From assembly GCF_006345805.1 (NCBI RefSeq), contig NC_042999.1, forward strand, positions 13,764,001-13,828,000: a DNA stretch of 64,000 nt. The letters run 5' to 3'. The stretch is from Octopus sinensis (Eukaryota). The notes under the pieces were generated by a model. It did not search any database. It had not been told where the DNA came from and saw only the letters and a program-made list of their open reading frames with translations. Both the position numbers and the translations under genes were made by a program. Below, one piece after another: positions 9,939 to 49,011 of the stretch; the stretch's first letter is position 1, and every line of letters starts with the position of its first letter.

Positions 9939-10400
9939 ACCGCTATCTCCAAGCCATAATCTACTTGATATTTTTTTATTTAAAAATAATTTTATCTGGA
10001 TAAACTGTCAAGTTTAGCCTGAACACTGTGTGTGTGTGGGGGGGTACATTTCTCTAGACATCACATGATGGTTGCAAATGAGCATCCTTGTAATACAAAA
10101 GAAGTTGTTCTTTTCCGGTCTTCTGTAACAATGTCTCGCCATGGAAAAAATATTACATTACTTGAAAACAGGTGAGGGTTGGCAACAGGAAGGGCATTCA
10201 GCCAAAGAAAATTTGCTTCAACAAATTCCATCTGACTCCAGTAAGCATGGAAAAATAGACATTAAACAATGCTGATGTCTAGAACTTGGACCAAATGATA
10301 TAAGAGAGCAAAGTATATGTTAAAACCTGGGGAAAAAAATACAAAGAGGATTTGGGAAATTTTACATAAATTCATTTATAGAATCAAGGCGGGTATATAC

Positions 10401-10562
10401 CTTTTCATCTTTTACATCAAAGGGCTCATCTTTTCCACTGAACTTGTTGACTGTCTGTGCAACTCCGATCACTTCACCATCTCGGTCTTTAATCGGCATG
10501 CTGAGAATGCTGTGTGTCTTGTAGCCAGTTTTTTGATCAATCTCGTAATTAAAGCGAGGATC
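10401..10562 (-). CDS. Internal exon of a GAF-domain cyclic nucleotide phosphodiesterase (PDE5/PDE6/PDE11 family), C-terminal part of GAF-A
   Basis: Minus strand reads ...ttccattacttccAG|GATCCTCGC...GATGAAAAG|GTatat. It is 162 nt, 54 aa: [54 protein letters not shown], matching the DPRFN..ID..TGYKT..IL.MPI...G..IGVAQ..NK...F...DEK GAF motif. The paralog cannot be decided from one exon. Confidence 0.93.
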
Positions 10563-10984
10563 CTGGAAGTAATGGAAAGCAAGACAAATAAATAAAAGTT
10601 GCAATTCTTCAAAATCTATGTAGTTCTTCAAATTTTTTGAGAAGAAAACCAATTAAAATATGCAGTGTTACAAACATTGAAAGAATTTATAATTAAAAAA
10701 ACATTCTTAGCTAACTACAGGTCACAAAACAAACAAAATAAAGTTGAAGCCAACAAAATAGACTTGAGCCATTTATAAAATGTCACAAACAAATATAAAA
10801 TTGGTTTATTTCATGCTATCTTCTTTTCTCAGTCAGAAATTTGTCATTATTTCAATCACCAGTTACTTGCTTAAGGATGAAACTATGAACTTAATTATAG
10901 TTTTCTAGTAAAGTATTTTGATATTAACTGCATGTGTTGCTGTATAAAGTACAGCATATGATCTTCCCAAAAGTGGATAAAAGA

Positions 10985-17150: not shown

Positions 17151-17592
17151 CCTTTTCTCATCTAAATCTCTGCTTGCTTCATGCCTTCAGAGGTATGAAA
17201 AATTACAAACCTCTTACTTGAAAAACAGGTAAGGGTTAGCAACAGAAAGGGCATCCAGCTGTAAAAAAAACAATGCCTTCAAAATAGAGAGCTGTTACCT
17301 CTGCTGCAGTGAGACCATTCTCTCAATGGACGAAGAGAAGTTTGTTTAATGCTTGTGTACGATGTACAATGTACAAAGTGCAATATTGCATGGTAACAAA
17401 ACAAAGGCAGAGGATGTACAGGATTTGTCAAGGTTTGAATGAAATGAGATGAGCAATATCCGAGTATGAAATGAGAATGTGTACAAACAGAGCACATCTC
17501 TACAGAGTAAAAGACTGGTTGTGATGATAGTGGTTGTTGTGATGGTGGAATGCTAGACTAGATGCTGTTTAGCATGTAGTTTTCGTGTGGTA

Positions 17593-18638
17593 AGTAGCTT
17601 GCTAACCAACCACATGGTTCCAGATTCAGACCCACTACATGGCTCCTACCGGCTTGTAGCTTGCTAACCAACCACATGGTTCCAGATTCAGTCCCACTAC
17701 ATGGCTCCTACCGGCTTGTAGCTTGCTAACCAACCACATGGTTCCAGATTCAGTCCCACTACATGGCTCCTACCGGCTTGTTGTAGCTTGCTAACCAACC
17801 ACATGGTTCCAGATTCAGTCCCACTACATGGCTCCTACCGGCTTGTAGCTTGCTAACCAACCACATGGTCCAGATTCAGTCCCACTACATGGCTCTACCG
17901 GCTTGTAGCTTGCTAACCAACCACATGGTTCCAGATTCAGTCCCACTACATGGCTCCTACGGCTTGTAGCTTGCTAACCAACCACATGGTTCCAGATTCA
18001 GTCCCACTACTGGCTCCTACCGGCTTGTAGCTTGCTACCAACCACATGGTTCCAGATTCAGTCCCACTACTGGCTCCTACCGGCTTGTAGCTTGCTAACC
18101 AACCACATGGTTCCAGATTCAGTCCCACTACATGGCTCCTACCGGTTTGTAGCTTGCTAACCAACCACATGGTTCCAGATTCAGTCCACTACATGGCTCC
18201 TACCGGCTTGTAGCTTGCTAACCAACCACATGGTTCCAGATTCAGTCCCACTACATGGCTCCTACCGGCTTGTAGCTTGCTAACCAACCCATGGTTCCAG
18301 ATTCAGTCCCACTACATGGCTCCTACCGGCTTGTAGCTTGCTAACCAACCACATGGTTCAGATTCAGTCCCACTACATGGCTCCTACCGGCTTGTAGCTT
18401 GCTAACCAACCACATGGTTCCAGATTCAGTCCCACTACATGGCTCCTACCGGCTTGTAGCTTGCTAACCAACCACATGGTTCCAGATTCAGTCCCACTAC
18501 ATGGCTCCTACCGGCTTGTAGCTTGCTAACCAACCACATGGTTCCAGATTCAGTCCCACTACATGGCTCCTACCGGCTTGTAGCTTGCTAACCAACCACA
18601 TGGTTCCAGATTCAGTCCCACTACATGGCTCCTACCAG
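17593..18638 (+). repeat. 62-bp tandem array (about 17 copies) derived from the SINE-B tRNA-like head
   Basis: Unit GTAGCTTGCTAACCAACCACATGGTTCCAGATTCAGTCCCACTACATGGCTCCTACCGGCTT. Confidence 0.95.
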
Positions 18639-20191: not shown

Positions 20192-20405
20192 TCTTTACTC
20201 TTTTACTTGTTTCAGTCATTTGACTGCGGCCATGCTGGAGCACCGCCTTTAGTCGAGCATATCGACCCTGGGACTTATTCTATGTAAGCCCAGTACTTAT
20301 TCTATCAATCTCTTTTTGCCGAACCGCTAAGTGACGGGGACATAAACACACCAGCATTGTTTGTCAAGCGATGGTGGGGGGACAAACACAGACACACAAA
20401 CATAT

Positions 20406-20438
<33 letters not shown>

Positions 20439-20609
20439 CATATATACGACAGGCTTCTTTCAGTTTCCGTCTACCAAATCCACTCACAAGGCATTGGTCG
20501 GCCCGAGGCTATAGTAGAAGACACTTGCCCAAGATGCCACGCAGTCGGACTGAACCCGGAACCATGTGGTTGCTAAGCAAGCTACTTACCACACAGCCAC
20601 TCCTGCGCC
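20192..20609 (-). mobile_element. SINE-B, full length
   Basis: Consensus match. Confidence 0.9.
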
Positions 20610-21049
20610 TATATATATATATATTCTAACTCATGCTACCATAGAAAAAGGGACATAAAACAAATGAACATATACCTAAGCTTCTACTAAAGTTACTTTC
20701 AATAAAGTAAATTGGTGTGTAGAACTAAAACACAGTTACATTTCGGAGTAAATTGGAAAGAACTGGTTAATTCTTTTGGAATGTAGAGACAACAAACTGC
20801 AGGTGAATATTGCATTAGATTTTCCATAGATCATCTTAAAAGATTCATTTGCAGAACAGACTTCTGTCACCAGATTAATGAGGATTCCAAGATTACTAAT
20901 CAATATGGCTGAAAACAAAATCTTATAACAGTTGCATTTGCTGTTTAGCACCGAGCCCTGATTGAAATAACCAAAGATCAAAAGCATTCCAACAATGACC
21001 ATCTGGTCCTACTCTGGAGCATTGTTTCTCTTTAACTAAATTACCTTAT

Positions 21050-27567: not shown

Positions 27568-28274
27568 ACAACCAGCAAACACATGAAGACAAGGAAGAAG
27601 AGGTGATGAGTATTAAACAAAGACAAAAGCTTTCAAAGAAATAGTCTCCTAAGACAGCATGTTCAATAAAACTACCTAGGTGGACATTTACGATAAAAAA
27701 TTTAAATGAAATATTTAAAGCAATTTCAAAAAGAAATTTTATATTCCATGGTATATAAGACCCTTTTTTTTTCTTTTTTTCTGAAACAAAATCACCCCAG
27801 GTCTTATATACCAAGTTACACCTTTAGCAAGTTAATTTTGTTCTTGATACACACTTTTTCCTGAAATTAGGGTACTTCTAATATACTCTTTGTGTCTTTT
27901 ATGTCATCAAATACAGAATATATTTCATGGTTCTCTATAGAATTCCAGCTATCTTACTGTTTCAAAATAATTGTGGAATTTTCATGGGTACTGCTAGATG
28001 TGATTAATAGCAGTAGCAGCAGAATTGCTTAATAGCATTTCCAAAAATGAGGTCTTTTAGGATTTGCTTGTGCCAGATTCCAAGAATAACAATGTTAAGC
28101 ATCCCAGAGTAATAGCTGATGTTCATGCTTTTTCTTCTTTTTTCTCACAATAGCAAAAGAAAGAATTACAATTAAAAGATGTCAACCATATTGACCAACA
28201 GGCCTCCAAGAAAGCCTCCACAAAGTCACCTGATCTGCTAGAAATAACAACCAAATACACTTAAATTATATCCT

Positions 28275-28670
28275 AGGAGTGGCTGTGTGGTAAGTAGCTT
28301 GCTAACCAACCACATGGTTCCGGGTTCAGGCCCACTGCGTGGCACCTTGGGCAAGTGTCTTCTACTATAGCCTCGGGCCGACCAATGCCTTGTGAGTGGA
28401 TTTGGTAGACGGAAACTGAAAGAAGCCTGTCGTATATATGTATATATAAATGTGTGTGTGTATGTGTTTGTGTGTCTGTGTTTGTCCCCCTAGCATTGCT
28501 TGACAACCGATGCTGGTGTGTTTACGTCCCCGTCACTTAACGGTTCAGCAAAAGAGACCGATAGAATAAGTAGTGGGCTTACAAAGAATAAGTCCCGGGG
28601 TCGATTTGCTCAACTAAAAGGCGGTGCTCCAGCATGGCTGCAGTCAAATGACTGAAACAAGTAAAAGAGT
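28275..28670 (+). mobile_element. SINE-B, full length
   Basis: Consensus match. Confidence 0.9.
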
Positions 28671-28884
28671 ATAATCTTAATTAAGGAAAGGACACAATGG
28701 AAAATGTAAATCTTTGAGGAATCCTTAACCCTTTTGATTCCAACCCATCTGAGACTACCCCTGGTTCTATTCTATAAATTTCCCAAGCATGGCTGCCGTG
28801 ATATAAGTTTCCCAAACCATGTGATTGCAAAGATCACTTTGTAACGACATGATTTTAGGTTCAGTCTCACTGCAAAGTACCTAC

Positions 28885-33150: not shown

Positions 33151-33304
33151 AAGCACAAATCTTGGGGTTTATCCATTACACTAAAAACCCTTCAACATGA
33201 TGCTCCACCAGAGTCACAGTCTAGTGACTGACACACAAAAAAAGATAACAGACAAGAAAAGGACCTTATTAGGCGGAATATTAACTGTTTTGTTACCATA
33301 TAGG

Positions 33305-33710
33305 CATTGGAGTGGCTGTGTGGTAAGCAGCTTGCTTACAAACCACATGGTTCCAGGTTCAGTCCCACTGCGTGGCACCTTGGGCAAGTGTCTTCTACTA
33401 TAGCCTCGGGCCGACCAAAGCCTTGTGAATGGATTTGGTAGATAGAAACTGAAAGAAGCCCGTTGTATATATGCATATATATGTGTGTGTGTGTGTGTGT
33501 GTTTGTGTGTTTGTGTTTGTCCCTCCAACATCGCTAGTCAGCCGATGCTAGTGTCTTTACATCCCCGTAACTTAGCGGTTCGGCAGAAGAGACTGATAGA
33601 ATAAGTACTAGGCTTACAAAGAATAAGTTCTGGGGTTGATTTGCTCGAATAAAGGTGGTGCTCCAGCATGGCCACAGTCAAATGAATGAAACAAGTAAAA
33701 GAGTAAAAGA
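33305..33710 (+). mobile_element. SINE-B, full length
   Basis: Consensus match. Confidence 0.9.
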
Positions 33711-35573: not shown

Positions 35574-36100
35574 GTGACGTATATTTGCCATTTGAATATG
35601 GCTAACCCCTAAGGGTGGATGCTACTGTAGTTTGTAGCCCCAGGAAGACACCTCCTCCAGCTGGCTGGGGTTAGCCATATTCAAATGGCAAATATACGTC
35701 ACGATGTGTTACCGCTACTGTTTATAACTCGCTCTGAGATTTATCATTGTTTGATTTCACTTTTTCAATATCAGTGTCAATCGATACTGGAAAAAGTATA
35801 TGTATTTGTGAGGGAAACTGACTTCTTGTCAACAACTATGATTGTCACACGCCGATGATAGGTCAATACCTTGAAACTCGAGTTTGTGTGTATCATAAGT
35901 TGAAGACGGGAAGGATGACTTCCCTTCACAAATACTGATAGGGCACAGAAAGTGTGTCTATAGCCAGCTGGAGGAGGTGTCTTCCTGGGGCTACAAACTA
36001 CAGTAGCATCAACCCTTAGGGGTTAGCCATACTCAAATGGCAAATATACATCATGATGTGTTACCGCTACTGTTTATAACTCGCTCTGAGATTTATCATT
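35574..36100 (+). mobile_element. Second copy of the 352-bp hammerhead-bearing element
   Basis: Antisense arm 35574-35666 and sense part 35667-36100 (GGGGTTAGCC recurs at 35667 and 36019). Same start, same 3' end and same 46-nt tail as the 40692 copy; flanked by (TA)n. Confidence 0.75.
35846..35890 (+). ncRNA. Decayed copy of the same hammerhead ribozyme
   Basis: CACACG-CcGATGA-tAGGT caat ACCTT-GAAAC-TCGA-GTt-tGTGTG; U4C core change and GUU triplet. Confidence 0.75.
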
Positions 36101-39985: not shown

Positions 39986-40437
39986 ATCATCATCATCATA
40001 TATATATATATATATAAGGTATAAATTAGAGGTATTAAGCCTTCAAAGGGATAGAAGTATCCAGAGGCACTACAGGTATTTACCTCAGTGTGTGTGTGTG
40101 TATTTGTCTCCCACAACCACTTGATAACCAGTGTTGACATGTTTATGTCCCCGTAACTTAGTGGTTCGGCAAAAGAGACCAATAAAATAAGTACCATGCT
40201 ATAATAAAATAAGTACTGGGGTTGATTCATTCGAATAAAATCTTTCAAGATGGAGCCCCAGCATGGCCACAGTCTAGAGACTGAAACAAGTAAAAGAATA
40301 AAAGAATATTATTATGAATTTTTCCAACTGAACCCGAAAACCCTATTTTCAGTAGCACAATAGTGAAAAAATTCTTTTCTATTCTAGGCAGCAGATAATT
40401 GAAAAAGGTAAACCGTAAGTTAATGTATATATAGGCA

Positions 40438-40576
40438 ATAAGAAAATGAAGGAAAAACAACAAATAGAAGTGTGTCTTTGGTGCTAAAAAGCCATTATTT
40501 AATTAGCTAACTAATTAAATGGCTTTTTAGTACCAAAGACACACTTCTATTTGTTGTTTTATTTCCATTTTCTTAT
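40438..40576. repeat. Inverted repeat with about 68-bp arms and a 4-nt loop
   Basis: ATAAGAAAATG...TTTAATTAG ctaa CTAATTAAAT...CATTTTCTTAT. Confidence 0.8.
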
Positions 40577-40616
40577 CATATATATATATTTATATTTACC
40601 AGAGTAAACACATAAA

Positions 40617-40691
<75 letters not shown>

Positions 40692-40695
<4 letters not shown>

Positions 40696-41267
40696 CACAT
40701 ATTTGCCATTTGAATATGGCTAACCCCTAAGGGTGGATGCTACTGTAGTTTGTAGCCCCAGGAAGATATCTCCTCCAGCTGGCTATAGACACACTATCTG
40801 TGTCCTTTCAGTATTTGTGAAGGGGAGTCATCCTCCCCGTCTTCAACTCATGATACACACGGACCCGAGTTTCAAGGTGTTTACCTTTCATCAGCGTGTG
40901 ACAATCATGGTTGTTGACGAGAAGTCAGCTCCCTTCACAAATACATATACTTTTTCCAGTGACGATTGACAGTGATATTGAAAAAGTGAAATCAAACAAT
41001 GATAAATCTCAGAGCGAGTTATAAACAGTAGCGGTAACACATCGTGACGCATATTTGCCATTTGAATACGGCTAACCCCTAAGGGTGGATGCTCACAAAT
41101 ACTGAGAGGACAGAGATAGTGTGTCTATAGCCAGCTGGAGGAGATATCTTCCTGGGGCTACAAACTACAGTAGCATCCACCCTTAGGGGTTAGCCATATT
41201 CAAATGGCAAATATGCGTCACGATGTGTTACCGCTACTGTTTATAACTCGCTCTGAGTTTTATCATT
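40692..41267. mobile_element. Penelope-like pLTR / retrozyme-like non-autonomous element with a 352-bp monomer
   Basis: Antisense arm 40692-41093 (about 1.15 monomer; GTGAC.CATATTTGCC recurs at 40692 and 41044), sense arm 41093-41267, 46-nt unpaired tail, flanked by (TA)n. Confidence 0.75.
40856..40900 (-). ncRNA. Minimal type-I hammerhead ribozyme with intact core
   Basis: Minus strand: CACACG-CTGATGA-AAGGT AAAC ACCTT-GAAAC-TCGG-GTC-CGTGTG. Stem I 6 bp, stem II 5 bp, near-palindromic short stem III, GUC cleavage triplet (predicted cut between 40862 and 40861). Confidence 0.88.
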
Positions 41268-41629
41268 ATATATATATATATATATTTTATATATAGAGGG
41301 CATTATTATACATAGATGCCACACGCTAAGAGGGACAAAAAGTCATTTCTACAAAAAATTTTACTAATCCCACCGAATGCAATCTTTCAAAGCAAGACAT
41401 TTAAAAAATATATAGACTTGTATCACCTGTGATTAATATGTTCAATAAGAAAGAATTATTTTCGAAATTTTTCTCTTATGAGGTTTTTCACGCTATCTAC
41501 CTGATAATTTCTTATTAAGATTCCTTATTAAGAAGTTGTCCTTAATTGCTAAATATATATATATATTATATATATATATATGTATATATATATGTATGTA
41601 TATATGTATATATAATATATATATTATAG

Positions 41630-42035
41630 GCATAGGAATGGCTGTGTGGTAAGTATCTTGCTTACCAATCACATGGTTCCGGGTTCATTCCCATTGAGTG
41701 GCACCTTGGGCAAGTGTCTTCTACTATAGCCTCAGGCCAACCAAAAGCCTTGTGAGTGGATTTGGTAGACGGAAACTGAAAGAAGCTCATTGTATATAAG
41801 TATATATATATGTACGTGTGTGTATATATTTGTGTGTCTGTGTTTGTCCCCCCAACATCGCTTGACAACCGATGCTGGTGTGTTTACATCCCCGTAACTT
41901 AGCGGTTCGGCAAAAGAAGACCGATAGAATAAGTACTAGGCTTACAAAGAATAAGTCCTGGGGTCGATTTGCTCGACTAAAGGCGTTGCTCCAGCATGGC
42001 CACAGTCAAATGACTGAAACAAGTAAAAGAATAAA
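41630..42035 (+). mobile_element. SINE-B, full length
   Basis: Consensus match. Confidence 0.9.
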
Positions 42036-42662
42036 AGAAAAAAAAATATAAAAGATAGAAGATAATATCACCTAAACCATGCTGGCATGGAAAAAATGGA
42101 CGTAAAACCTGACAAACAAATGAAGAACATAGTTGATTCTACAGTGACATAAACTAGATGTAATATTTTACATGATTCTTACAGCTTCTGCAAGTAAAGT
42201 GGTATTTTGTTCTCTTAATTCTTCAATTTCAGAGAGTCAAGTACAATACTTGAACTCCAATTTAGTAATGATTTTTCTTTTGCTTCTTTTCTTGTCTTTT
42301 TTTTCTTTTGTTGTTCTTGGTTCTTTTTGTTCTATTTATTCATTTATTTGTTTATCTATTTATTTATTTTGCCTATTAGTTTCATACTCAAAACATGTAT
42401 GGCACTGGCATTTCAGCTGGAAGGGTACTAAATTGCTTCATGAAAAAAAATTAAAAAATAAAATTATGAAATATTCAGTGCTTAGAGCAAGTTCTTTCTT
42501 TAGTCACATATATTTTCTGCCGCTTTCTCTCTCTCTCTCTGGTATTTGAAACATTATAATGAGCATAAAAATTTAGCCAGAATCTAAGGTTAAAATTATC
42601 AACTCAAGACAAGGTTTAACGCAGAATGTTGGACACTTAATATATAAAAATATTCAGTAAAC

Positions 42663-45469: not shown

Positions 45470-45572
45470 TAAGGCCCTCATGCTTTCCGAAATCCGCCGA
45501 AACTACACCTGATTATACATACACTTTAGATGAGTTGTAGTGCACCTGAGCACTGTACAATGTTTTATTATT
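45470..45572 (+). mobile_element. Short duplicate of the CR1 3' end
   Basis: Near-identical to 45180-45280. Confidence 0.8.
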
Positions 45573-47405
45573 GCTCAATGCAGAGTTGAAGATTTTGGCC
45601 AAGGTGCTAGCCAAGAGATTGGCGCTCGTCGTGGACAAGCTGGTCGGCGGGACGCAGACATGCGCCGTGCCGACCAGGTCGATACACGACAACCTCCATC
45701 TCATGCGCTACATCATAGAGAGGGTGGGTAACGACGCTGGCGCGGGTGGGGCTTTGATCAACTTGGATCAGAGTAAAGCCTTCGATAGGGTCGACCATCG
45801 GTACCTGGCAGCTGTCCTCAAGGCAGCCGGCTTCGGTCCAGTCTTCCGCGGGTGGATCGCTGCTTTATACAGCAACATCTGCTCGGTGATACGGGTGAAC
45901 GGTCACCTTTCGGAACCGTTCGACATCCTTGGCGGACCGAACGCGAGATGTCGAACGGTTCCGAAAGGTGACCGTTCACCCGTATCACCGAGGTGGATAA
46001 GAACTGGGAAGAGGTGACGAGCAGGGTGGCACGTCTCACCCAGAAATGGGCCGAGAGGAAGCTGTCCCTGAAAGGTCGAGCGGAGGTGGCGAATGCGTAC
46101 ATCGCATCCGTCATCTATTACCGCTTGACCGTCGTCCCTTGTCCCGACCGCTGGTTGGCCAAGCTGGTACGCCTGCTCTTCGACTTTTTGTGGAAGGGTC
46201 AGGTGCCACTGGTCAGGCGATCCATCTGCTGTCAACGACCGCTGAACGGAGGCCTTGGAATGCCGTGGTTGCTGTTGCGCAGACATGCGCTCAGGCTGCG
46301 GCATCTCAAGCGCTCCTAGACGGTGAACAGGTGTGGTCGTCTTTTGTCAGACGCGATTTTCCGCAGCTCGTCTCTTTGACGGAGCTGCAGACCTGGATCA
46401 AACGTAGACCGAGAAAGGGCGCTTGGCATCTCGAGTGCCATCAAGCCTCTCCGCCCTCCACCAGGCGGGCAATGCGGTCGGTTACAGCTCCACTCTAGCG
46501 TTCTATAGAGGGTTAGTGGAGGAAAAATGCGACGACGTTCTCGGGAAAACTCTAGGCGTTGAAGACGACGAACTGAGCGGTCTGTTCGGGAGGACTTTCG
46601 GGCGGGGCCGATGGATAATTTCCAGAGGTCTCTCGCCTGGCAGTGCTACCGAGGGGCTCTGCCTGTTCGAGATAAACTCTACCGGCATGGAAGTGCCGTC
46701 AGCCGGGCCTGCCCGAGGTGTTGCCAGGACGACGAAACCGTTCTGCACGCACTCGTCCAGTGCCCGAGTATTGCTGAAATATGGGTTTATGTCGAACAGC
46801 TACTGTCACGTGTAGGACGGATCCGACTATCGGCCGAATCCATAGTGAAGATTGCCCCGCCGACCTCCTTTAACAAGGAGGGCGAGGCCGTTTTCTTGTG
46901 CCTTGTGGCTGTGGCGAAAGAAGTTGTGTGGTGGACTCGTTTGAAAGGGCTAAAGTCAGACACTTTCCTCTTTGGTCAAGGCCTCATCAACTTTTTCAAG
47001 TTTCACTTGAAAAGAAAGATGAGGTTAGAGAGGAAAGTGCTGTCTGATAGCAAGTTTTATGAAAGGTGGGTGAATTGTGCGAGACTGGCCTGTATAAATG
47101 GACCAGTTCTCAGGTTTCGCCTGTGATTTCAAAGAAAAAGGTAATGTAAAAGGAGAAGAAAGGGGACTCTCTACACCCCCTTTTTTTTGACCAGACTCCC
47201 GTTGGCTTTTGTAGGGTTTTTTCCACCAGGAACCTTTCGAGACGTCTCCCCCTTTTGGGAGTTTTTCATTGTTGAATTTTATAAGTTGTTATAAAGATTT
47301 TTACTCAATGTTTTTCAAAAAACGGCAAAACCCTTTGTAACCTTTCGTCCTGTCTTGTCCCTTTATGTAATCATGCGTGTCAGCCCTTGTGGCCAATAAA
47401 AAAGA
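45573..47405 (+). mobile_element. 5'-truncated Tx1/L1-type non-LTR retrotransposon (RT fragment, CCHC zinc knuckle, 3' UTR); pseudogenised
   Basis: ORFs give KILAKVLAKRL...LDQSKAFDRVDH...VIRVNGHLS, NWEEV..RV, and CPRC...ETVLHALVQC. It has several frameshifts and lacks the RT core; it ends with AATAAA followed by (TTA)n. Confidence 0.9.
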
Positions 47406-47986: not shown

Positions 47987-48708
47987 CCATATTTTAACTG
48001 GTATAAGGAACCCTTTTTTTGTCAAAAATTATGTTAAAAAATGGGAGTTTCTTATATAATCCCTTACAAAACTTTTTTTCCAAATTTTAAGCGCCAAAAA
48101 TTAGGGGGTTCCTTACACACGTTAAAATACGGTAAAATGGGAGTTTCTTATATAATCCTTTACAAAACTTTTTTTCCAAATTTTAAGCTCCAAAAATTAG
48201 GGGGTTCCTTGCACACGTTAAAATACGTTAAAATGGGAGTTTCTTACATAATCCCATACAAAACTTTTTTTCCAAATTTTAAGCTCCAAAAATTAGGGGG
48301 CTCCTTACACATGTTAAAATACGGTAAAATGGGAGTTTCTTATATAATCCCTTACAAAACTTTTTTTCCAAATTTTAAGCTCCAAAAATTAGGGGACTCC
48401 TTACACATGTTAAAATACGGTAAAATGGGAGTTTCTTATATAATCCCTTACAAAACTTTTTTTCCAAATTTTAAGCTCCAAAAATTAGGGGGTTCCTTAC
48501 ACACGTTAAAATACAGTAAAATGGGAGTTTCTTATATAATCCTTTACAAAACTTTTTTTCCAAATTTTAAGCTCCAAAAATTAGGGAGTTCCTTACACAC
48601 GTTAAAATACAGTAAAATGGGAGTTTCTTATATAATCCCTTACAAAACTTTTTTTCCGAATTTTAAGCTCCAAAAATTAGGGGGTTCCTTACACACGTTA
48701 AAATACGG
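47987..48708. mobile_element. Tc2/pogo-like MITE with its right end amplified seven times
   Basis: TA|CCATATTTTAACTGGTATAAGGAACCC ... GGGTTCCTTACACACGTTAAAATACGG|TA. Confidence 0.7.
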
Positions 48709-48712
48709 TAAA
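48041..48712 (+). repeat. 96-bp tandem repeat, 7 copies
   Basis: ATGGGAGTTTCTTA recurs at 48041, 48137, ... 48617. Confidence 0.95.
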
Positions 48713-49011
48713 TTCAGTCAACCCAACCCCATCCAATATATTCTAACTTCATTGAGTTGTGCTGACAGCCAACACTCCCTCTCCCCTCTGAGCCATCTCT
48801 ACTACCACCCTAACATACTCTCCCCTATCTCATCAGCCATGTCTTCATATGCTATAGCTAAACACTCAGTCTCCCCCTGATCACCCCTACATATTCCTGT
48901 TCGCTTCCCAGCATGATCCTGTTCCTTCCACCCTCCCACCAATTCTGGTCCTTCTGACATGAGCGTTCTTTCTTTAAACCCTTTTCCAATCACTTGTGCA
49001 AATATACACAC

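What the first reader, a model, noticed from the sequence alone, without database searches (positions are those of the whole stretch)
40811..40944. Intact hammerhead ribozyme capping a long rod-like stem, in the sense orientation of the host PDE gene
Seen: the minus strand 40900->40856 reads CACACG CTGATGA AAGGT-AAAC-ACCTT GAAAC TCGG GTC CGTGTG. All conserved core nucleotides are present, with a 6-bp stem I, 5-bp stem II and GUC triplet. Stem I extends outward through CATGAT/ATCATG, CAAC/GTTG, CTCGTC/GACGGG and a perfect 14-bp GTATTTGTGAAGGG/CCCTTCACAAATAC, giving a rod of about 134 nt. Established: minimal type-I hammerheads with short near-palindromic stem III occur in Penelope-like elements and metazoan retrozymes, and often cleave best as dimers. 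Inference: the PDE exon is also on the minus strand. If this region is within its upstream intron, the pre-mRNA carries a potential self-cleaving site.
Basis: partly seen in the sequence, partly recalled or inferred. Interest (0 to 1): 0.85.

Follow-up and report, generated by a model that had tools for sequence, protein, structure and literature searches.

The report
Hammerhead ribozyme in an octopus retroelement
The hammerhead ribozyme motif is really there, but it belongs to a 352-base non-coding mobile element of a known kind (a Penelope-type "retrozyme") that landed in a very long intron of the octopus PDE11 gene; nothing shows that the gene uses it.

Summary
Window 40900->40856 (minus strand) has every conserved hammerhead core base in type I order. 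Helix I has 6 bp, helix II 5 bp, helix III 2 bp plus a UCGG loop, and the GUC cleavage site lies at 40862|40861. Rfam Hammerhead_1 aligns end to end (22.1 bits, below its cut-off of 34). A descriptor scan expects 0.003 such motifs per 64 kb.

The motif sits in a 352-nt, 42.6% GC unit without an ORF (41043..40692). That unit is part of a 576-bp composite: (TA)n, an inverted 5'-truncated copy, a direct 5'-truncated copy, the full unit, then (TA)n. A second, independent and older insertion lies at 35574-36100 on the other strand, with a dead ribozyme (U4->C). The four outer ends of the two insertions fall at only two positions 46 nt apart. This is the "tail" signature reported as unique to Penelope-like elements.

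The only coding exon in the window (10392-10568, minus) encodes aa 254-312 of Octopus PDE11. No upstream exon lies in the next 53 kb, so the ribozyme is intronic and in sense.

Verdict: a new member of a known kind, namely a metazoan retrozyme or non-autonomous Penelope derivative. A role in regulating the host gene is possible but unsupported. Cleavage activity was not tested.

The parts
40856..40900 (-). Type I hammerhead ribozyme motif. Helix I 40900-40895 / 40861-40856; CUGAUGA 40894-40888; helix II plus AAAC loop 40887-40874; GAAA 40873-40870; helix III plus UCGG loop 40870-40863; C17 = 40862; predicted cleavage between 40862 and 40861.
   Evidence: Read directly. Rfam RF00163 matches 1-45/45, 22.1 bits. 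It is the only descriptor hit in the window, against 0.003 expected.
40811..40944 (-). 134-nt rod: helix I extended outward by four further helices, ending in a 14-bp perfect stem.
   Evidence: MFE -62.4 kcal/mol, z = -8.2. With the core forced open the same rod forms at -56.1 kcal/mol.
40692..41043 (-). Full 352-nt repeat unit (GATGTGTTACC ... GGCAAATATGTGTCAC), 42.6% GC, no ORF with homologues. It contains the rod and the hammerhead.
   Evidence: Delimited from the direct-repeat junction shared by copies A and B. The circular monomer folds at -118.5 kcal/mol with 62.5% of bases paired, z = -6.3. A six-frame protein search found nothing.
40998..41043 (-). 46-nt 'tail' segment (GATGTG...TTTATCATT), here internal at the junction between the direct partial copy and the full unit.
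   Evidence: It is present at one outer end only of each insertion, and the other outer end stops exactly at GTCAC. This matches the Penelope-specific tail between two reverse-transcription start sites (PMC11167929, PMC8557442).
41044..41091 (-). Direct 5'-truncated copy of the unit body (CATCCACCC...GTCAC). Together with the tail it forms a pseudo-LTR-like partial tandem.
   Evidence: Alignment A2 and self-BLAST.
41092..41267 (+). Inverted 5'-truncated copy (176 nt, truncated inside the 3' arm of the rod). It carries the tail at its outer end (41222-41267).
   Evidence: It differs from the unit's 3' part at 3-4 of about 130 positions.
40618..40691 (.). (TA)37 microsatellite flanking the tail-less end. 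A shorter (TA)n lies at 41267-41284 on the other side. This is the insertion target.
35574..36100 (+). Copy B: an independent composite insertion of the same family, in the opposite orientation. Inverted arm 35574-35666, direct partial copy from 35667, 352-nt unit 35703-36054, tail 36055-36100. The rod is 35802-35935 and the dead hammerhead is 35846-35890 (CCGAUGA, U.U at 10.1-11.1, GUU).
   Evidence: It has different inner truncation points and subfamily-diagnostic differences shared by all its arms.
10392..10568 (-). The only host-gene exon in the window: the GAF-A domain exon of PDE11, aa 254-312 of XP_036356755.1 (Octopus sinensis).
   Evidence: Pfam GAF E = 1.6e-5. tblastn gives 56/59 identical residues.

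Best explanation
This is one dispersed copy of a short (352-nt), non-coding, hammerhead-bearing retroelement. It is of the 'non-LTR retrozyme' / non-autonomous Penelope-like class.

How it got here (inferred): it was copied into a (TA)n microsatellite by Penelope-type target-primed reverse transcription. The template RNA was longer than one unit, either multimeric or circular. The insertion lies inside an intron of at least 53 kb in the Octopus PDE11 gene, on the sense strand.

What the hammerhead does (inferred from the family): it belongs to the element's own life cycle. [quoted passage not shown] Those RNAs are then circularised by a host RNA ligase and reverse transcribed. Helix I is prolonged into a rod that forms one arm of the highly self-paired monomer.

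At this locus the ribozyme is a passenger. If it is active it would cut the PDE11 pre-mRNA intron at 40862|40861, about 30 kb before the next acceptor site is transcribed.

Shown here: the motif, the unit, the insertion architecture, the second copy, and the host exon and strand.
Inferred: intronic position, Penelope mobilisation and the life cycle.
Not tested: catalysis and expression.
For: - Motif: all core bases and three helices in type I order. Chance expectation is 0.003 per window.
- Unit: 352 nt, 42.6% GC, no ORF homologues, strongly self-paired. Published metazoan retrozymes are RNAs of about 170-400 nt, under 45% GC, with mussel repeats of 350-390 bp (PMC7229834).
- Architecture: (TA)n, inverted 5'-truncated copy, direct 5'-truncated copy, full unit, (TA)n, in both copies A and B. 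This is the arrangement described for Penelope-like insertions (PMC8557442).
- Termini: the four outer ends of A and B stop at only two positions 46 nt apart (GTCAC| or TTTATCATT|), with one of each per insertion. This is the 'tail' signature that reflects two reverse-transcription start sites and is described as unique to Penelope-like elements (PMC11167929).
- Independent events: A and B differ in inner truncation points and in diagnostic bases shared by all arms of each copy. The unit-to-unit junction is identical in both, so the template exceeded one unit.
- Age: arms differ by about 2.5% in A and 4-4.5% in B. B's ribozyme core is mutated, so there is no sign of selection in situ.
- Host: the exon is PDE11 aa 254-312 on the minus strand, no other PDE11 exon is in the window, and the O. 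sinensis gene spans 293 kb.
- Octopus genomes carry Penelope families (PMC13282606).
Against: - The Rfam gathering score is not reached (22.1 vs 34 bits).
- A10.1-U11.1 replaces the usual G-C at the foot of helix II.
- The competent fold is 6.3 kcal/mol above an alternative that pairs CUGA with UCGG.
- Only two copies could be examined. No octopus genome or repeat library was available, so copy number, tandem arrays, family consensus and homology to an autonomous Penelope pLTR are all untested.
- The locus holds 1.27 units with a single hammerhead, not a tandem array.
- No Penelope RT/GIY-YIG ORF is in the window.
- R4/Dong-type LINEs, which I recall from memory target TA-rich repeats, are abundant in Octopus (PMC13282606). 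They could be an alternative mobiliser.
- No expression or cleavage data exist.
Confidence: 0.8

Rival explanations
1. Domesticated intronic ribozyme. The hammerhead has been co-opted to cut the PDE11 pre-mRNA co-transcriptionally and tune its splicing or isoform output. The models are the amniote intronic hammerheads (RECK, CTCL, DTNB) and the CPEB3 HDV-like ribozyme.
For: The motif is intact and lies in sense inside the intron. It sits 30.3 kb upstream of the acceptor, so even a slow ribozyme would cut before the acceptor is transcribed. An isoform (X3) starts at an ATG in the downstream exon. There is precedent in PMC6155905 and PMC10919898.
Against: The insertion is young, with arms about 2.5% apart. 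It has full transposon anatomy, and a sister copy in the same intron is antisense and decayed. Given that divergence, an intact 45-nt motif is expected by chance in roughly half of such copies (my estimate). About 44% of Xenopus retrozyme copies overlap introns (10.64898/2026.07.22.740005). Intron cleavage by a hammerhead did not impair splicing in the exon-tethering experiments (PMC2995048, citing Dye 2006). Conservation at the orthologous site could not be tested.
Confidence: 0.04
2. A MITE or foldback DNA transposon with long terminal inverted repeats that targets TA and merely carries a hammerhead-like sequence.
For: Inverted repeats of about 130-175 bp flank the centre, and both copies sit in (TA)n.
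Against: The two ends are not equivalent: one carries the 46-nt tail and the other stops at GTCAC, and the sides are swapped between A and B. There is an additional direct partial copy. The inner junctions differ between A and B by 49 nt. None of this is expected of cut-and-paste copies with fixed termini. All of it is described for Penelope-like insertions.
Confidence: 0.06
3. A SINE-like element mobilised by a (TA)n-targeting LINE (R4/Dong type) rather than by a Penelope-like element. The inverted arm would arise by a twin-priming-like event.
For: Dong-R4 is the largest active LINE group reported in O. vulgaris (PMC13282606). The flanks are (TA)n. LINE remnants are nearby.
Against: The inverted and direct arms both start from the element's 3' end, not from adjacent template segments as in twin priming. 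Two alternative 3' termini 46 nt apart are the Penelope signature (PMC11167929). Hammerheads are linked with Penelope-like elements, not LINEs (PMC4209133).
Confidence: 0.08
4. The motif is correct in sequence but catalytically poor or dead as a monomer. The reasons would be the A-U at 10.1-11.1, the 2-bp helix III, the competing CUGA/UCGG pairing and the lack of recognisable loop-loop contacts. On this reading it is only a relic.
For: The score is below the Rfam threshold. The competent fold is disfavoured by 6.3 kcal/mol. Axolotl hammerheads with a weak foot of helix II cleave only 22% in one hour as monomers (PMC7229834). Minimal Penelope hammerheads cleave poorly in vitro (PMC4209133).
Against: Invertebrate retrozyme hammerheads, which carry this helix III type, cleave efficiently: the coral example has kobs of about 0.8 per min (PMC7229834). 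The helix III strands ACUCGGGU can form an 8-bp intermolecular helix (-10.3 kcal/mol), which permits dimeric activity in trans.
Confidence: 0.3

Closest known systems
Metazoan non-LTR retrozymes (Cervera & de la Pena 2020, PMC7229834; Li et al. 2026 preprint, 10.64898/2026.07.22.740005)
   Same: A canonical type I hammerhead with helix I of 6 bp, helix II of 4-5 bp and a 2-bp helix III closed by a tetraloop. The unit is 352 nt (mussel repeats are 350-390 bp), GC is below 45%, there is no ORF, and the monomer is highly self-paired. It co-exists with Penelope elements in the host genome. Dispersed monomer copies, many in introns, are reported for Xenopus.
   Different: This locus has 1.27 units and one ribozyme, not a tandem array. 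The foot of helix II is A-U. circRNA expression is unknown. No cephalopod family was found described in the searched literature.
Penelope-like elements and their pLTR hammerheads (PMC4209133, PMC8557442, PMC11167929)
   Same: A partial tandem (pseudo-LTR), an inverted 5'-truncated copy at the 5' side, a tail at one end only with two alternative termini, microsatellite (TA)n targets, and a hammerhead in the repeated non-coding part.
   Different: There is no RT/GIY-YIG ORF, so the element is non-autonomous. The hammerhead is canonical and has a helix III, whereas most metazoan Penelope hammerheads are minimal and lack it. The tail is 46 nt against the usual 30-40 bp.
Schistosoma Sm-alpha, newt satellite 2 and cave-cricket hammerheads (seed of Rfam RF00163)
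   Same: The same type I topology and the same length: 45 model positions align without a gap.
   Different: The sequences of helices I and II and of the loops differ. The score of 22.1 bits is below the family cut-off of 34.
Conserved intronic ribozymes of amniotes (HH9/HH10 in RECK, CTCL, DTNB; CPEB3 HDV-like ribozyme; PMC6155905, PMC10919898)
   Same: A self-cleaving motif in sense orientation inside a long intron of a protein-coding gene. Those hammerheads are thought to derive from retroelements.
   Different: Those are single, deeply conserved motifs without surviving transposon anatomy. This one is a young insertion with intact transposon structure and a decayed sister copy.

Membership tests
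Hammerhead ribozyme, type I (Rfam RF00163) | Conserved core: C3 U4 G5 A6 N7 G8 A9, G12 A13 A14, A15.1-U16.1, H17 | tested here: met
   CUGAUGA, GAAA, A-U and GUC are all present and are aligned to the model core.
Hammerhead ribozyme, type I (Rfam RF00163) | Three helices around the core, with helix I open-ended | tested here: met
   Helix I has 6 bp, helix II 5 bp, helix III 2 bp plus a tetraloop. There are no non-canonical pairs in the cmscan alignment.
Hammerhead ribozyme, type I (Rfam RF00163) | Score at or above the curated gathering threshold (34 bits) | tested here: not met
   22.1 bits, E = 0.001 in a 68-nt search. There was no hit in the whole-window or 551-nt searches. A control hammerhead in L002 also fails.
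Hammerhead ribozyme, type I (Rfam RF00163) | Loop 1 / loop 2 tertiary contacts and actual self-cleavage | not testable with these tools
   This needs in vitro transcription and cleavage mapping. The internal loop UGU/U in helix I and the AAAC loop 2 are merely present.
Metazoan non-LTR retrozyme | Short non-coding unit (about 170-400 nt), GC below 45%, carrying a canonical type I hammerhead | tested here: met
   352 nt and 42.6% GC. No homologue for any reading frame.
Metazoan non-LTR retrozyme | Head-to-tail tandem copies, each with a hammerhead | tested here: not met
   There are only 1.27 direct units and one hammerhead at each locus. The identical unit-to-unit junction in two independent insertions implies a template longer than one unit, but source arrays were not seen.
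Metazoan non-LTR retrozyme | Monomer RNA predicted to be highly self-paired | tested here: met
   Circular fold of -118.5 kcal/mol, 62.5% of bases paired, z = -6.3.
Metazoan non-LTR retrozyme | Expression as linear and circular unit-length RNA | not testable with these tools
   No transcriptome data are available here.
Penelope-like element insertion (mobilisation by the Penelope RT/EN) | Partial tandem (pseudo-LTR) plus an adjacent inverted 5'-truncated copy | tested here: met
   Both copies A and B show this, with different truncation points.
Penelope-like element insertion (mobilisation by the Penelope RT/EN) | Optional 'tail': outer termini at two discrete positions, with the tail at one end only | tested here: met
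   The four termini fall at GTCAC| (A unit, B inverted arm) or TTTATCATT| (A inverted arm, B unit), 46 nt apart. Only two insertions were available.
Penelope-like element insertion (mobilisation by the Penelope RT/EN) | Insertion bias for microsatellites | tested here: met
   Both copies are flanked on both sides by (TA)n.
Penelope-like element insertion (mobilisation by the Penelope RT/EN) | ORF with telomerase-like RT and GIY-YIG endonuclease | tested here: not met
   There is no ORF in the element. The element can therefore only be a non-autonomous derivative.
Penelope-like element insertion (mobilisation by the Penelope RT/EN) | Sequence homology of the unit to the pLTR of an autonomous Penelope family of the same genome | not testable with these tools
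   No octopus genome or Repbase/Dfam library is at hand. Scans of viral and metagenome collections found no copy.
Domesticated intronic hammerhead (HH9/HH10 type) | Sense orientation within an intron of a protein-coding gene | tested here: met
   The motif is on the same strand as the PDE11 exon. No exon for aa 1-253 lies in the 53 kb upstream of that exon. The intronic position is an inference from the RefSeq protein model.
Domesticated intronic hammerhead (HH9/HH10 type) | Conservation at the orthologous position across species | not testable with these tools
   The two related cephalopod loci fetched share only the exon and do not reach this far. The low divergence between arms argues for a recent insertion.

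The most novel reading that the evidence does not exclude
The sense-strand hammerhead is active in vivo and cuts the PDE11 pre-mRNA 30 kb before the acceptor of the GAF-A exon is transcribed. That would lower output of the full-length (two-GAF) isoforms relative to the N-terminally truncated isoform X3, whose ATG lies in that downstream exon. A young retrozyme insertion would then be acting as a lineage-specific modulator of a cyclic-nucleotide phosphodiesterase.

A second, more modest novel reading: these two insertions are direct architectural evidence (the tail signature) that canonical-hammerhead retrozymes are copied by the Penelope machinery.
Probability: 0.04. Interest if true: 0.6.

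Novelty: new member of a known kind. Interest (0 to 1): 0.3.

Why it matters
Hammerheads embedded in short non-autonomous retroelements are already known to be widespread in invertebrates, so another instance is ordinary. Three points give it modest value:

1. It documents such an element in an octopus. I found no paper describing hammerhead elements in cephalopods.
2. The two insertions show the Penelope-specific architecture (inverted copy, pseudo-LTR, two alternative termini) on a retrozyme-like unit with a canonical hammerhead. This supports, from insertion anatomy, the proposal that Penelope enzymes mobilise animal retrozymes. That proposal has so far been argued from co-occurrence and pLTR phylogeny.
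3. It is a natural case of a possibly active ribozyme in sense inside a very long intron, together with a predicted dsRNA stem of about 120 bp. It could be used to ask how tolerant long-intron genes are of such cargo.

Tried and rejected
- Rfam at gathering threshold on the whole window, and at E <= 10 on 551 nt: no hammerhead was reported. The hit appeared only when 68 nt were searched. The absence was a filter and threshold effect, not evidence against the motif.
- Looking for more copies:
  - Exact-pattern scans of viral contigs found nothing.
  - The element pattern found nothing in metagenome contigs.
  - The core pattern gave 49 metagenome hits, of which only L002 is a real hammerhead. 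L002 is a singleton with no tandem repeat.
  - A six-frame translation of the unit used as a protein query found nothing.
  - Two related cephalopod contigs fetched through the GAF exon share only that exon.
  - Sampling octopus DNA through LINE-ORF homologues returned only contigs of about 1 kb and one Argonauta protein, so I abandoned this route. The PDE11 gene range is too long for DNA retrieval.
- Covariation: with two sequences there is one compensatory pair (C-G to U-A), four one-sided changes that keep pairing and three broken pairs. This has no statistical weight and I did not use it.
- Pfam scan of repeat-masked minus-strand ORF segments across the whole window: only the single GAF exon was found. 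The PDE signature regex found nothing.
- MITE reading: rejected because of the asymmetric termini and the differing inner junctions.
- Twin-priming LINE reading: considered less likely because both arms start at the element's 3' end.
- Selection on the intact core: rejected as an argument. At about 1.25% divergence per arm, a 45-nt motif stays intact by chance in about half of copies.

Full report
**1. The observation**

Read on the minus strand, window 40900->40856 is CACACG-CUGAUGA-AAGGU-AAAC-ACCUU-GAAA-C-UCGG-G-U-C-CGUGUG. In hammerhead numbering this gives:
- C3-A9, G12-A14, the A15.1-U16.1 pair and C17, all conserved;
- a 6-bp helix I;
- a 5-bp helix II closed by AAAC;
- a 2-bp helix III closed by UCGG.

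Folding reproduces the outward extension of helix I into a 134-nt rod (40944..40811): -62.4 kcal/mol, z = -8.2.

Rfam reported nothing for the whole window or for a 551-nt stretch. When 68 nt were searched, Hammerhead_1 (RF00163) aligned over all 45 model positions without a gap or a non-canonical pair. The score was 22.1 bits, E = 0.001, below the curated 34 bits. A clearly genuine hammerhead that I recovered from a metagenome contig (L002) also stays below that threshold. The cut-off is therefore insensitive for this class.

A structural descriptor finds this single site in the window and one hit in 300 simulated 64-kb sequences. Of 49 metagenome matches to the bare core string, 48 have no helices. 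The motif is real and not a chance match.

There are two blemishes. The foot of helix II is A-U instead of the usual G-C. In the nearest-neighbour model, an alternative CUGA/UCGG pairing makes the MFE 6.3 kcal/mol more stable than the ribozyme-competent secondary structure.

**2. What surrounds it**

Self-comparison of the window shows that the motif is not free-standing. In ribozyme-sense reading the region is ordered as follows:
- (TA)n;
- an inverted, 5'-truncated copy (41267..41092, element sense on the plus strand);
- a direct, 5'-truncated copy (41091..41044);
- a 46-nt segment (41043..40998);
- the rest of a full unit ending at 40692;
- (TA)37.

The repeat unit is 352 nt (41043..40692) and 42.6% GC. 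No reading frame has a homologue. As a circular monomer the unit is strongly self-paired: -118.5 kcal/mol, 62.5% of bases paired, z = -6.3.

A second composite of the same family lies at 35574-36100 on the opposite strand. Its unit is also 352 nt. Its inverted and direct partial copies are truncated at different points (49 nt fewer at the inner junction). It carries base differences shared by all of its own arms but not by copy A. The two are therefore independent insertions from slightly different source copies. Yet the junction between the end of one unit and the start of the next (…GATTTATC|ATTGTTTG…) is identical in both. This means the template RNA was longer than one unit, either multimeric or circular.

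**3. Which machinery made it**

The four outer ends of the two insertions stop at only two positions.
- At …GTCAC: unit end of A, inverted arm of B.
- 46 nt further, at …TTTATCATT: inverted arm of A, unit end of B.

Each insertion has one end of each kind.

Craig et al. describe Penelope-like insertions as follows: a partial tandem forming a pseudo-LTR, an inverted 5'-truncated copy adjacent at the 5' side, a 30-40-bp tail often present at one end only, a bias for microsatellites such as (TA)n, and a hammerhead in the pseudo-LTR (PMC8557442). Frangieh et al. show that a Penelope enzyme starts reverse transcription at two adjacent internal sites. [quoted passage not shown]

The anatomy here matches point by point, except that there is no RT/endonuclease ORF. 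The hammerhead itself is not the minimal helix-III-less type typical of autonomous metazoan Penelope elements. It is the canonical type I form (6-bp helix I, helix II of about 4 bp, helix III of 1-2 bp with a small loop) described for metazoan retrozymes (PMC4209133; PMC7229834). Those are non-coding repeats with low GC, expressed as RNAs of about 170-400 nt (350-390 bp repeats in mussel) and proposed to be mobilised by Penelope elements. A 2026 preprint reaches the same conclusion from pLTR phylogeny (10.64898/2026.07.22.740005).

I therefore file the element as a retrozyme-type, non-autonomous Penelope derivative. The tandem-array criterion is not met at this locus, which holds 1.27 units and one ribozyme. 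Dispersed monomers are, however, reported as common derivatives.

**4. Age and selection**

Arms that were identical at insertion now differ by about 2.5% in copy A and 4-4.5% in copy B. Copy B's ribozyme has U4->C in the core, a U.U mismatch at 10.1-11.1, C17->U and further changes. Six to seven of the 15 rod differences between A and B fall inside the 45-nt motif.

There is thus no sign that the ribozyme is protected once inserted. Copy A's intactness is what one expects for roughly half of copies of that age (my estimate). With two sequences, the single compensatory pair has no weight.

**5. Host gene**

The only coding exon I could find on the minus strand is 10392-10568. Pfam assigns it to the GAF domain. 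An exhaustive HMMER search and a cluster look-up identify it as aa 254-312 of 'dual 3',5'-cyclic-AMP and -GMP phosphodiesterase 11' of Octopus sinensis, O. vulgaris and O. bimaculoides, with 56 of 59 residues identical. The window is therefore from an Octopus genome.

Sensitive tblastn with the full proteins finds no other PDE11 exon in the window. A Pfam scan of repeat-masked ORF segments agrees. The O. sinensis gene spans about 293 kb.

Residues 1-253 must be encoded upstream, so the intron preceding this exon is at least 53 kb long. It contains the hammerhead 30.3 kb upstream of the acceptor, on the transcribed strand. This is an inference from the protein model, not a transcript observation. 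Isoform X3 begins at an ATG inside this exon, so an unmapped alternative 5' exon may lie nearby.

**6. How it most likely works**

Within the family, and inferred from the literature, multimeric element transcripts are cut by the hammerhead into unit-length RNAs. A host ligase circularises them, and the Penelope enzyme reverse transcribes them into microsatellite targets.

At this locus the ribozyme is cargo in a pre-mRNA. If active, it would cleave long before the acceptor is made. Published work shows two outcomes. Splicing can survive hammerhead cleavage of an intron (exon tethering), whereas a fast ribozyme abolishes it (PMC2995048). An intronic HDV-like ribozyme does tune CPEB3 expression (PMC10919898). 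About 44% of Xenopus retrozyme copies overlap introns, with modest depletion relative to intergenic DNA.

The regulatory reading is therefore possible, but I rate it at a few per cent.

In trans it is conceivable, since ACUCGGGU can form an 8-bp helix with itself (-10.3 kcal/mol). Invertebrate retrozyme hammerheads, which have this helix III type, are reported to cleave efficiently.

**7. Limits**

I could not reach an octopus genome or a repeat library. All attempts to find further copies failed. Family size, consensus, covariation and the identity of the autonomous partner remain open. A LINE mobiliser and a poorly active ribozyme remain live alternatives. No step had to be referred.

Noticed in passing
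window 41221-41114 paired with 40692-40799 (minus-strand transcript): In the PDE11 pre-mRNA sense, the inverted arm and the unit's 3' part are predicted to form an uninterrupted 108-bp duplex, about 123 bp with small bulges. The whole 576-nt composite folds at -330 kcal/mol. A long intronic dsRNA of this kind is a typical ADAR or Dicer substrate, which is of interest in a cephalopod.
   Followed up: partly
window 40422-40590: A 169-bp near-perfect palindrome (86% self-complementary in BLAST) lies directly beside the (TA)n that received the insertion. It looks like a foldback or MITE-type element.
   Followed up: no
window 45571-47126 (+): A frameshifted LINE remnant with RVT_1 and zf-RVT domains. 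The closest named relative is a hypothetical protein of Argonauta hians. It is not a Penelope-type RT, and no autonomous partner for the hammerhead element is in the window.
   Followed up: partly
window-wide, e.g. 41611-42040, 40076-40390, 33299-33710, 28262-28674, 20194-20628: At least a dozen copies of a SINE-like repeat of about 400 bp occur in both orientations. 47% of the window matches another part of itself.
   Followed up: no
window 10392-10568 (-): The predicted PDE11 isoform X3 (XP_036356756.1, 596 aa) starts at an ATG inside this exon ([10 protein letters not shown]...). This implies an alternative promoter or 5' exon somewhere upstream, possibly within this window.
   Followed up: no
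window 17585-18633 and 48038-48877: Two minisatellites: a repeat of about 61 bp in roughly 17 copies, and a 96-bp repeat that reads as a 280-aa pseudo-ORF.
   Followed up: no
L002 6931-6965 (-), metagenome contig Ga0126336_10004877: A genuine type I hammerhead (GAGCAA CUGAUGA GGUUC-ACUGAA-GAACC GAAAC-UCGG-GUC UUGCUU). Its helix III and loop are identical to those of the octopus motif. It is a singleton on its contig and also scores below the Rfam gathering score.
   Followed up: partly
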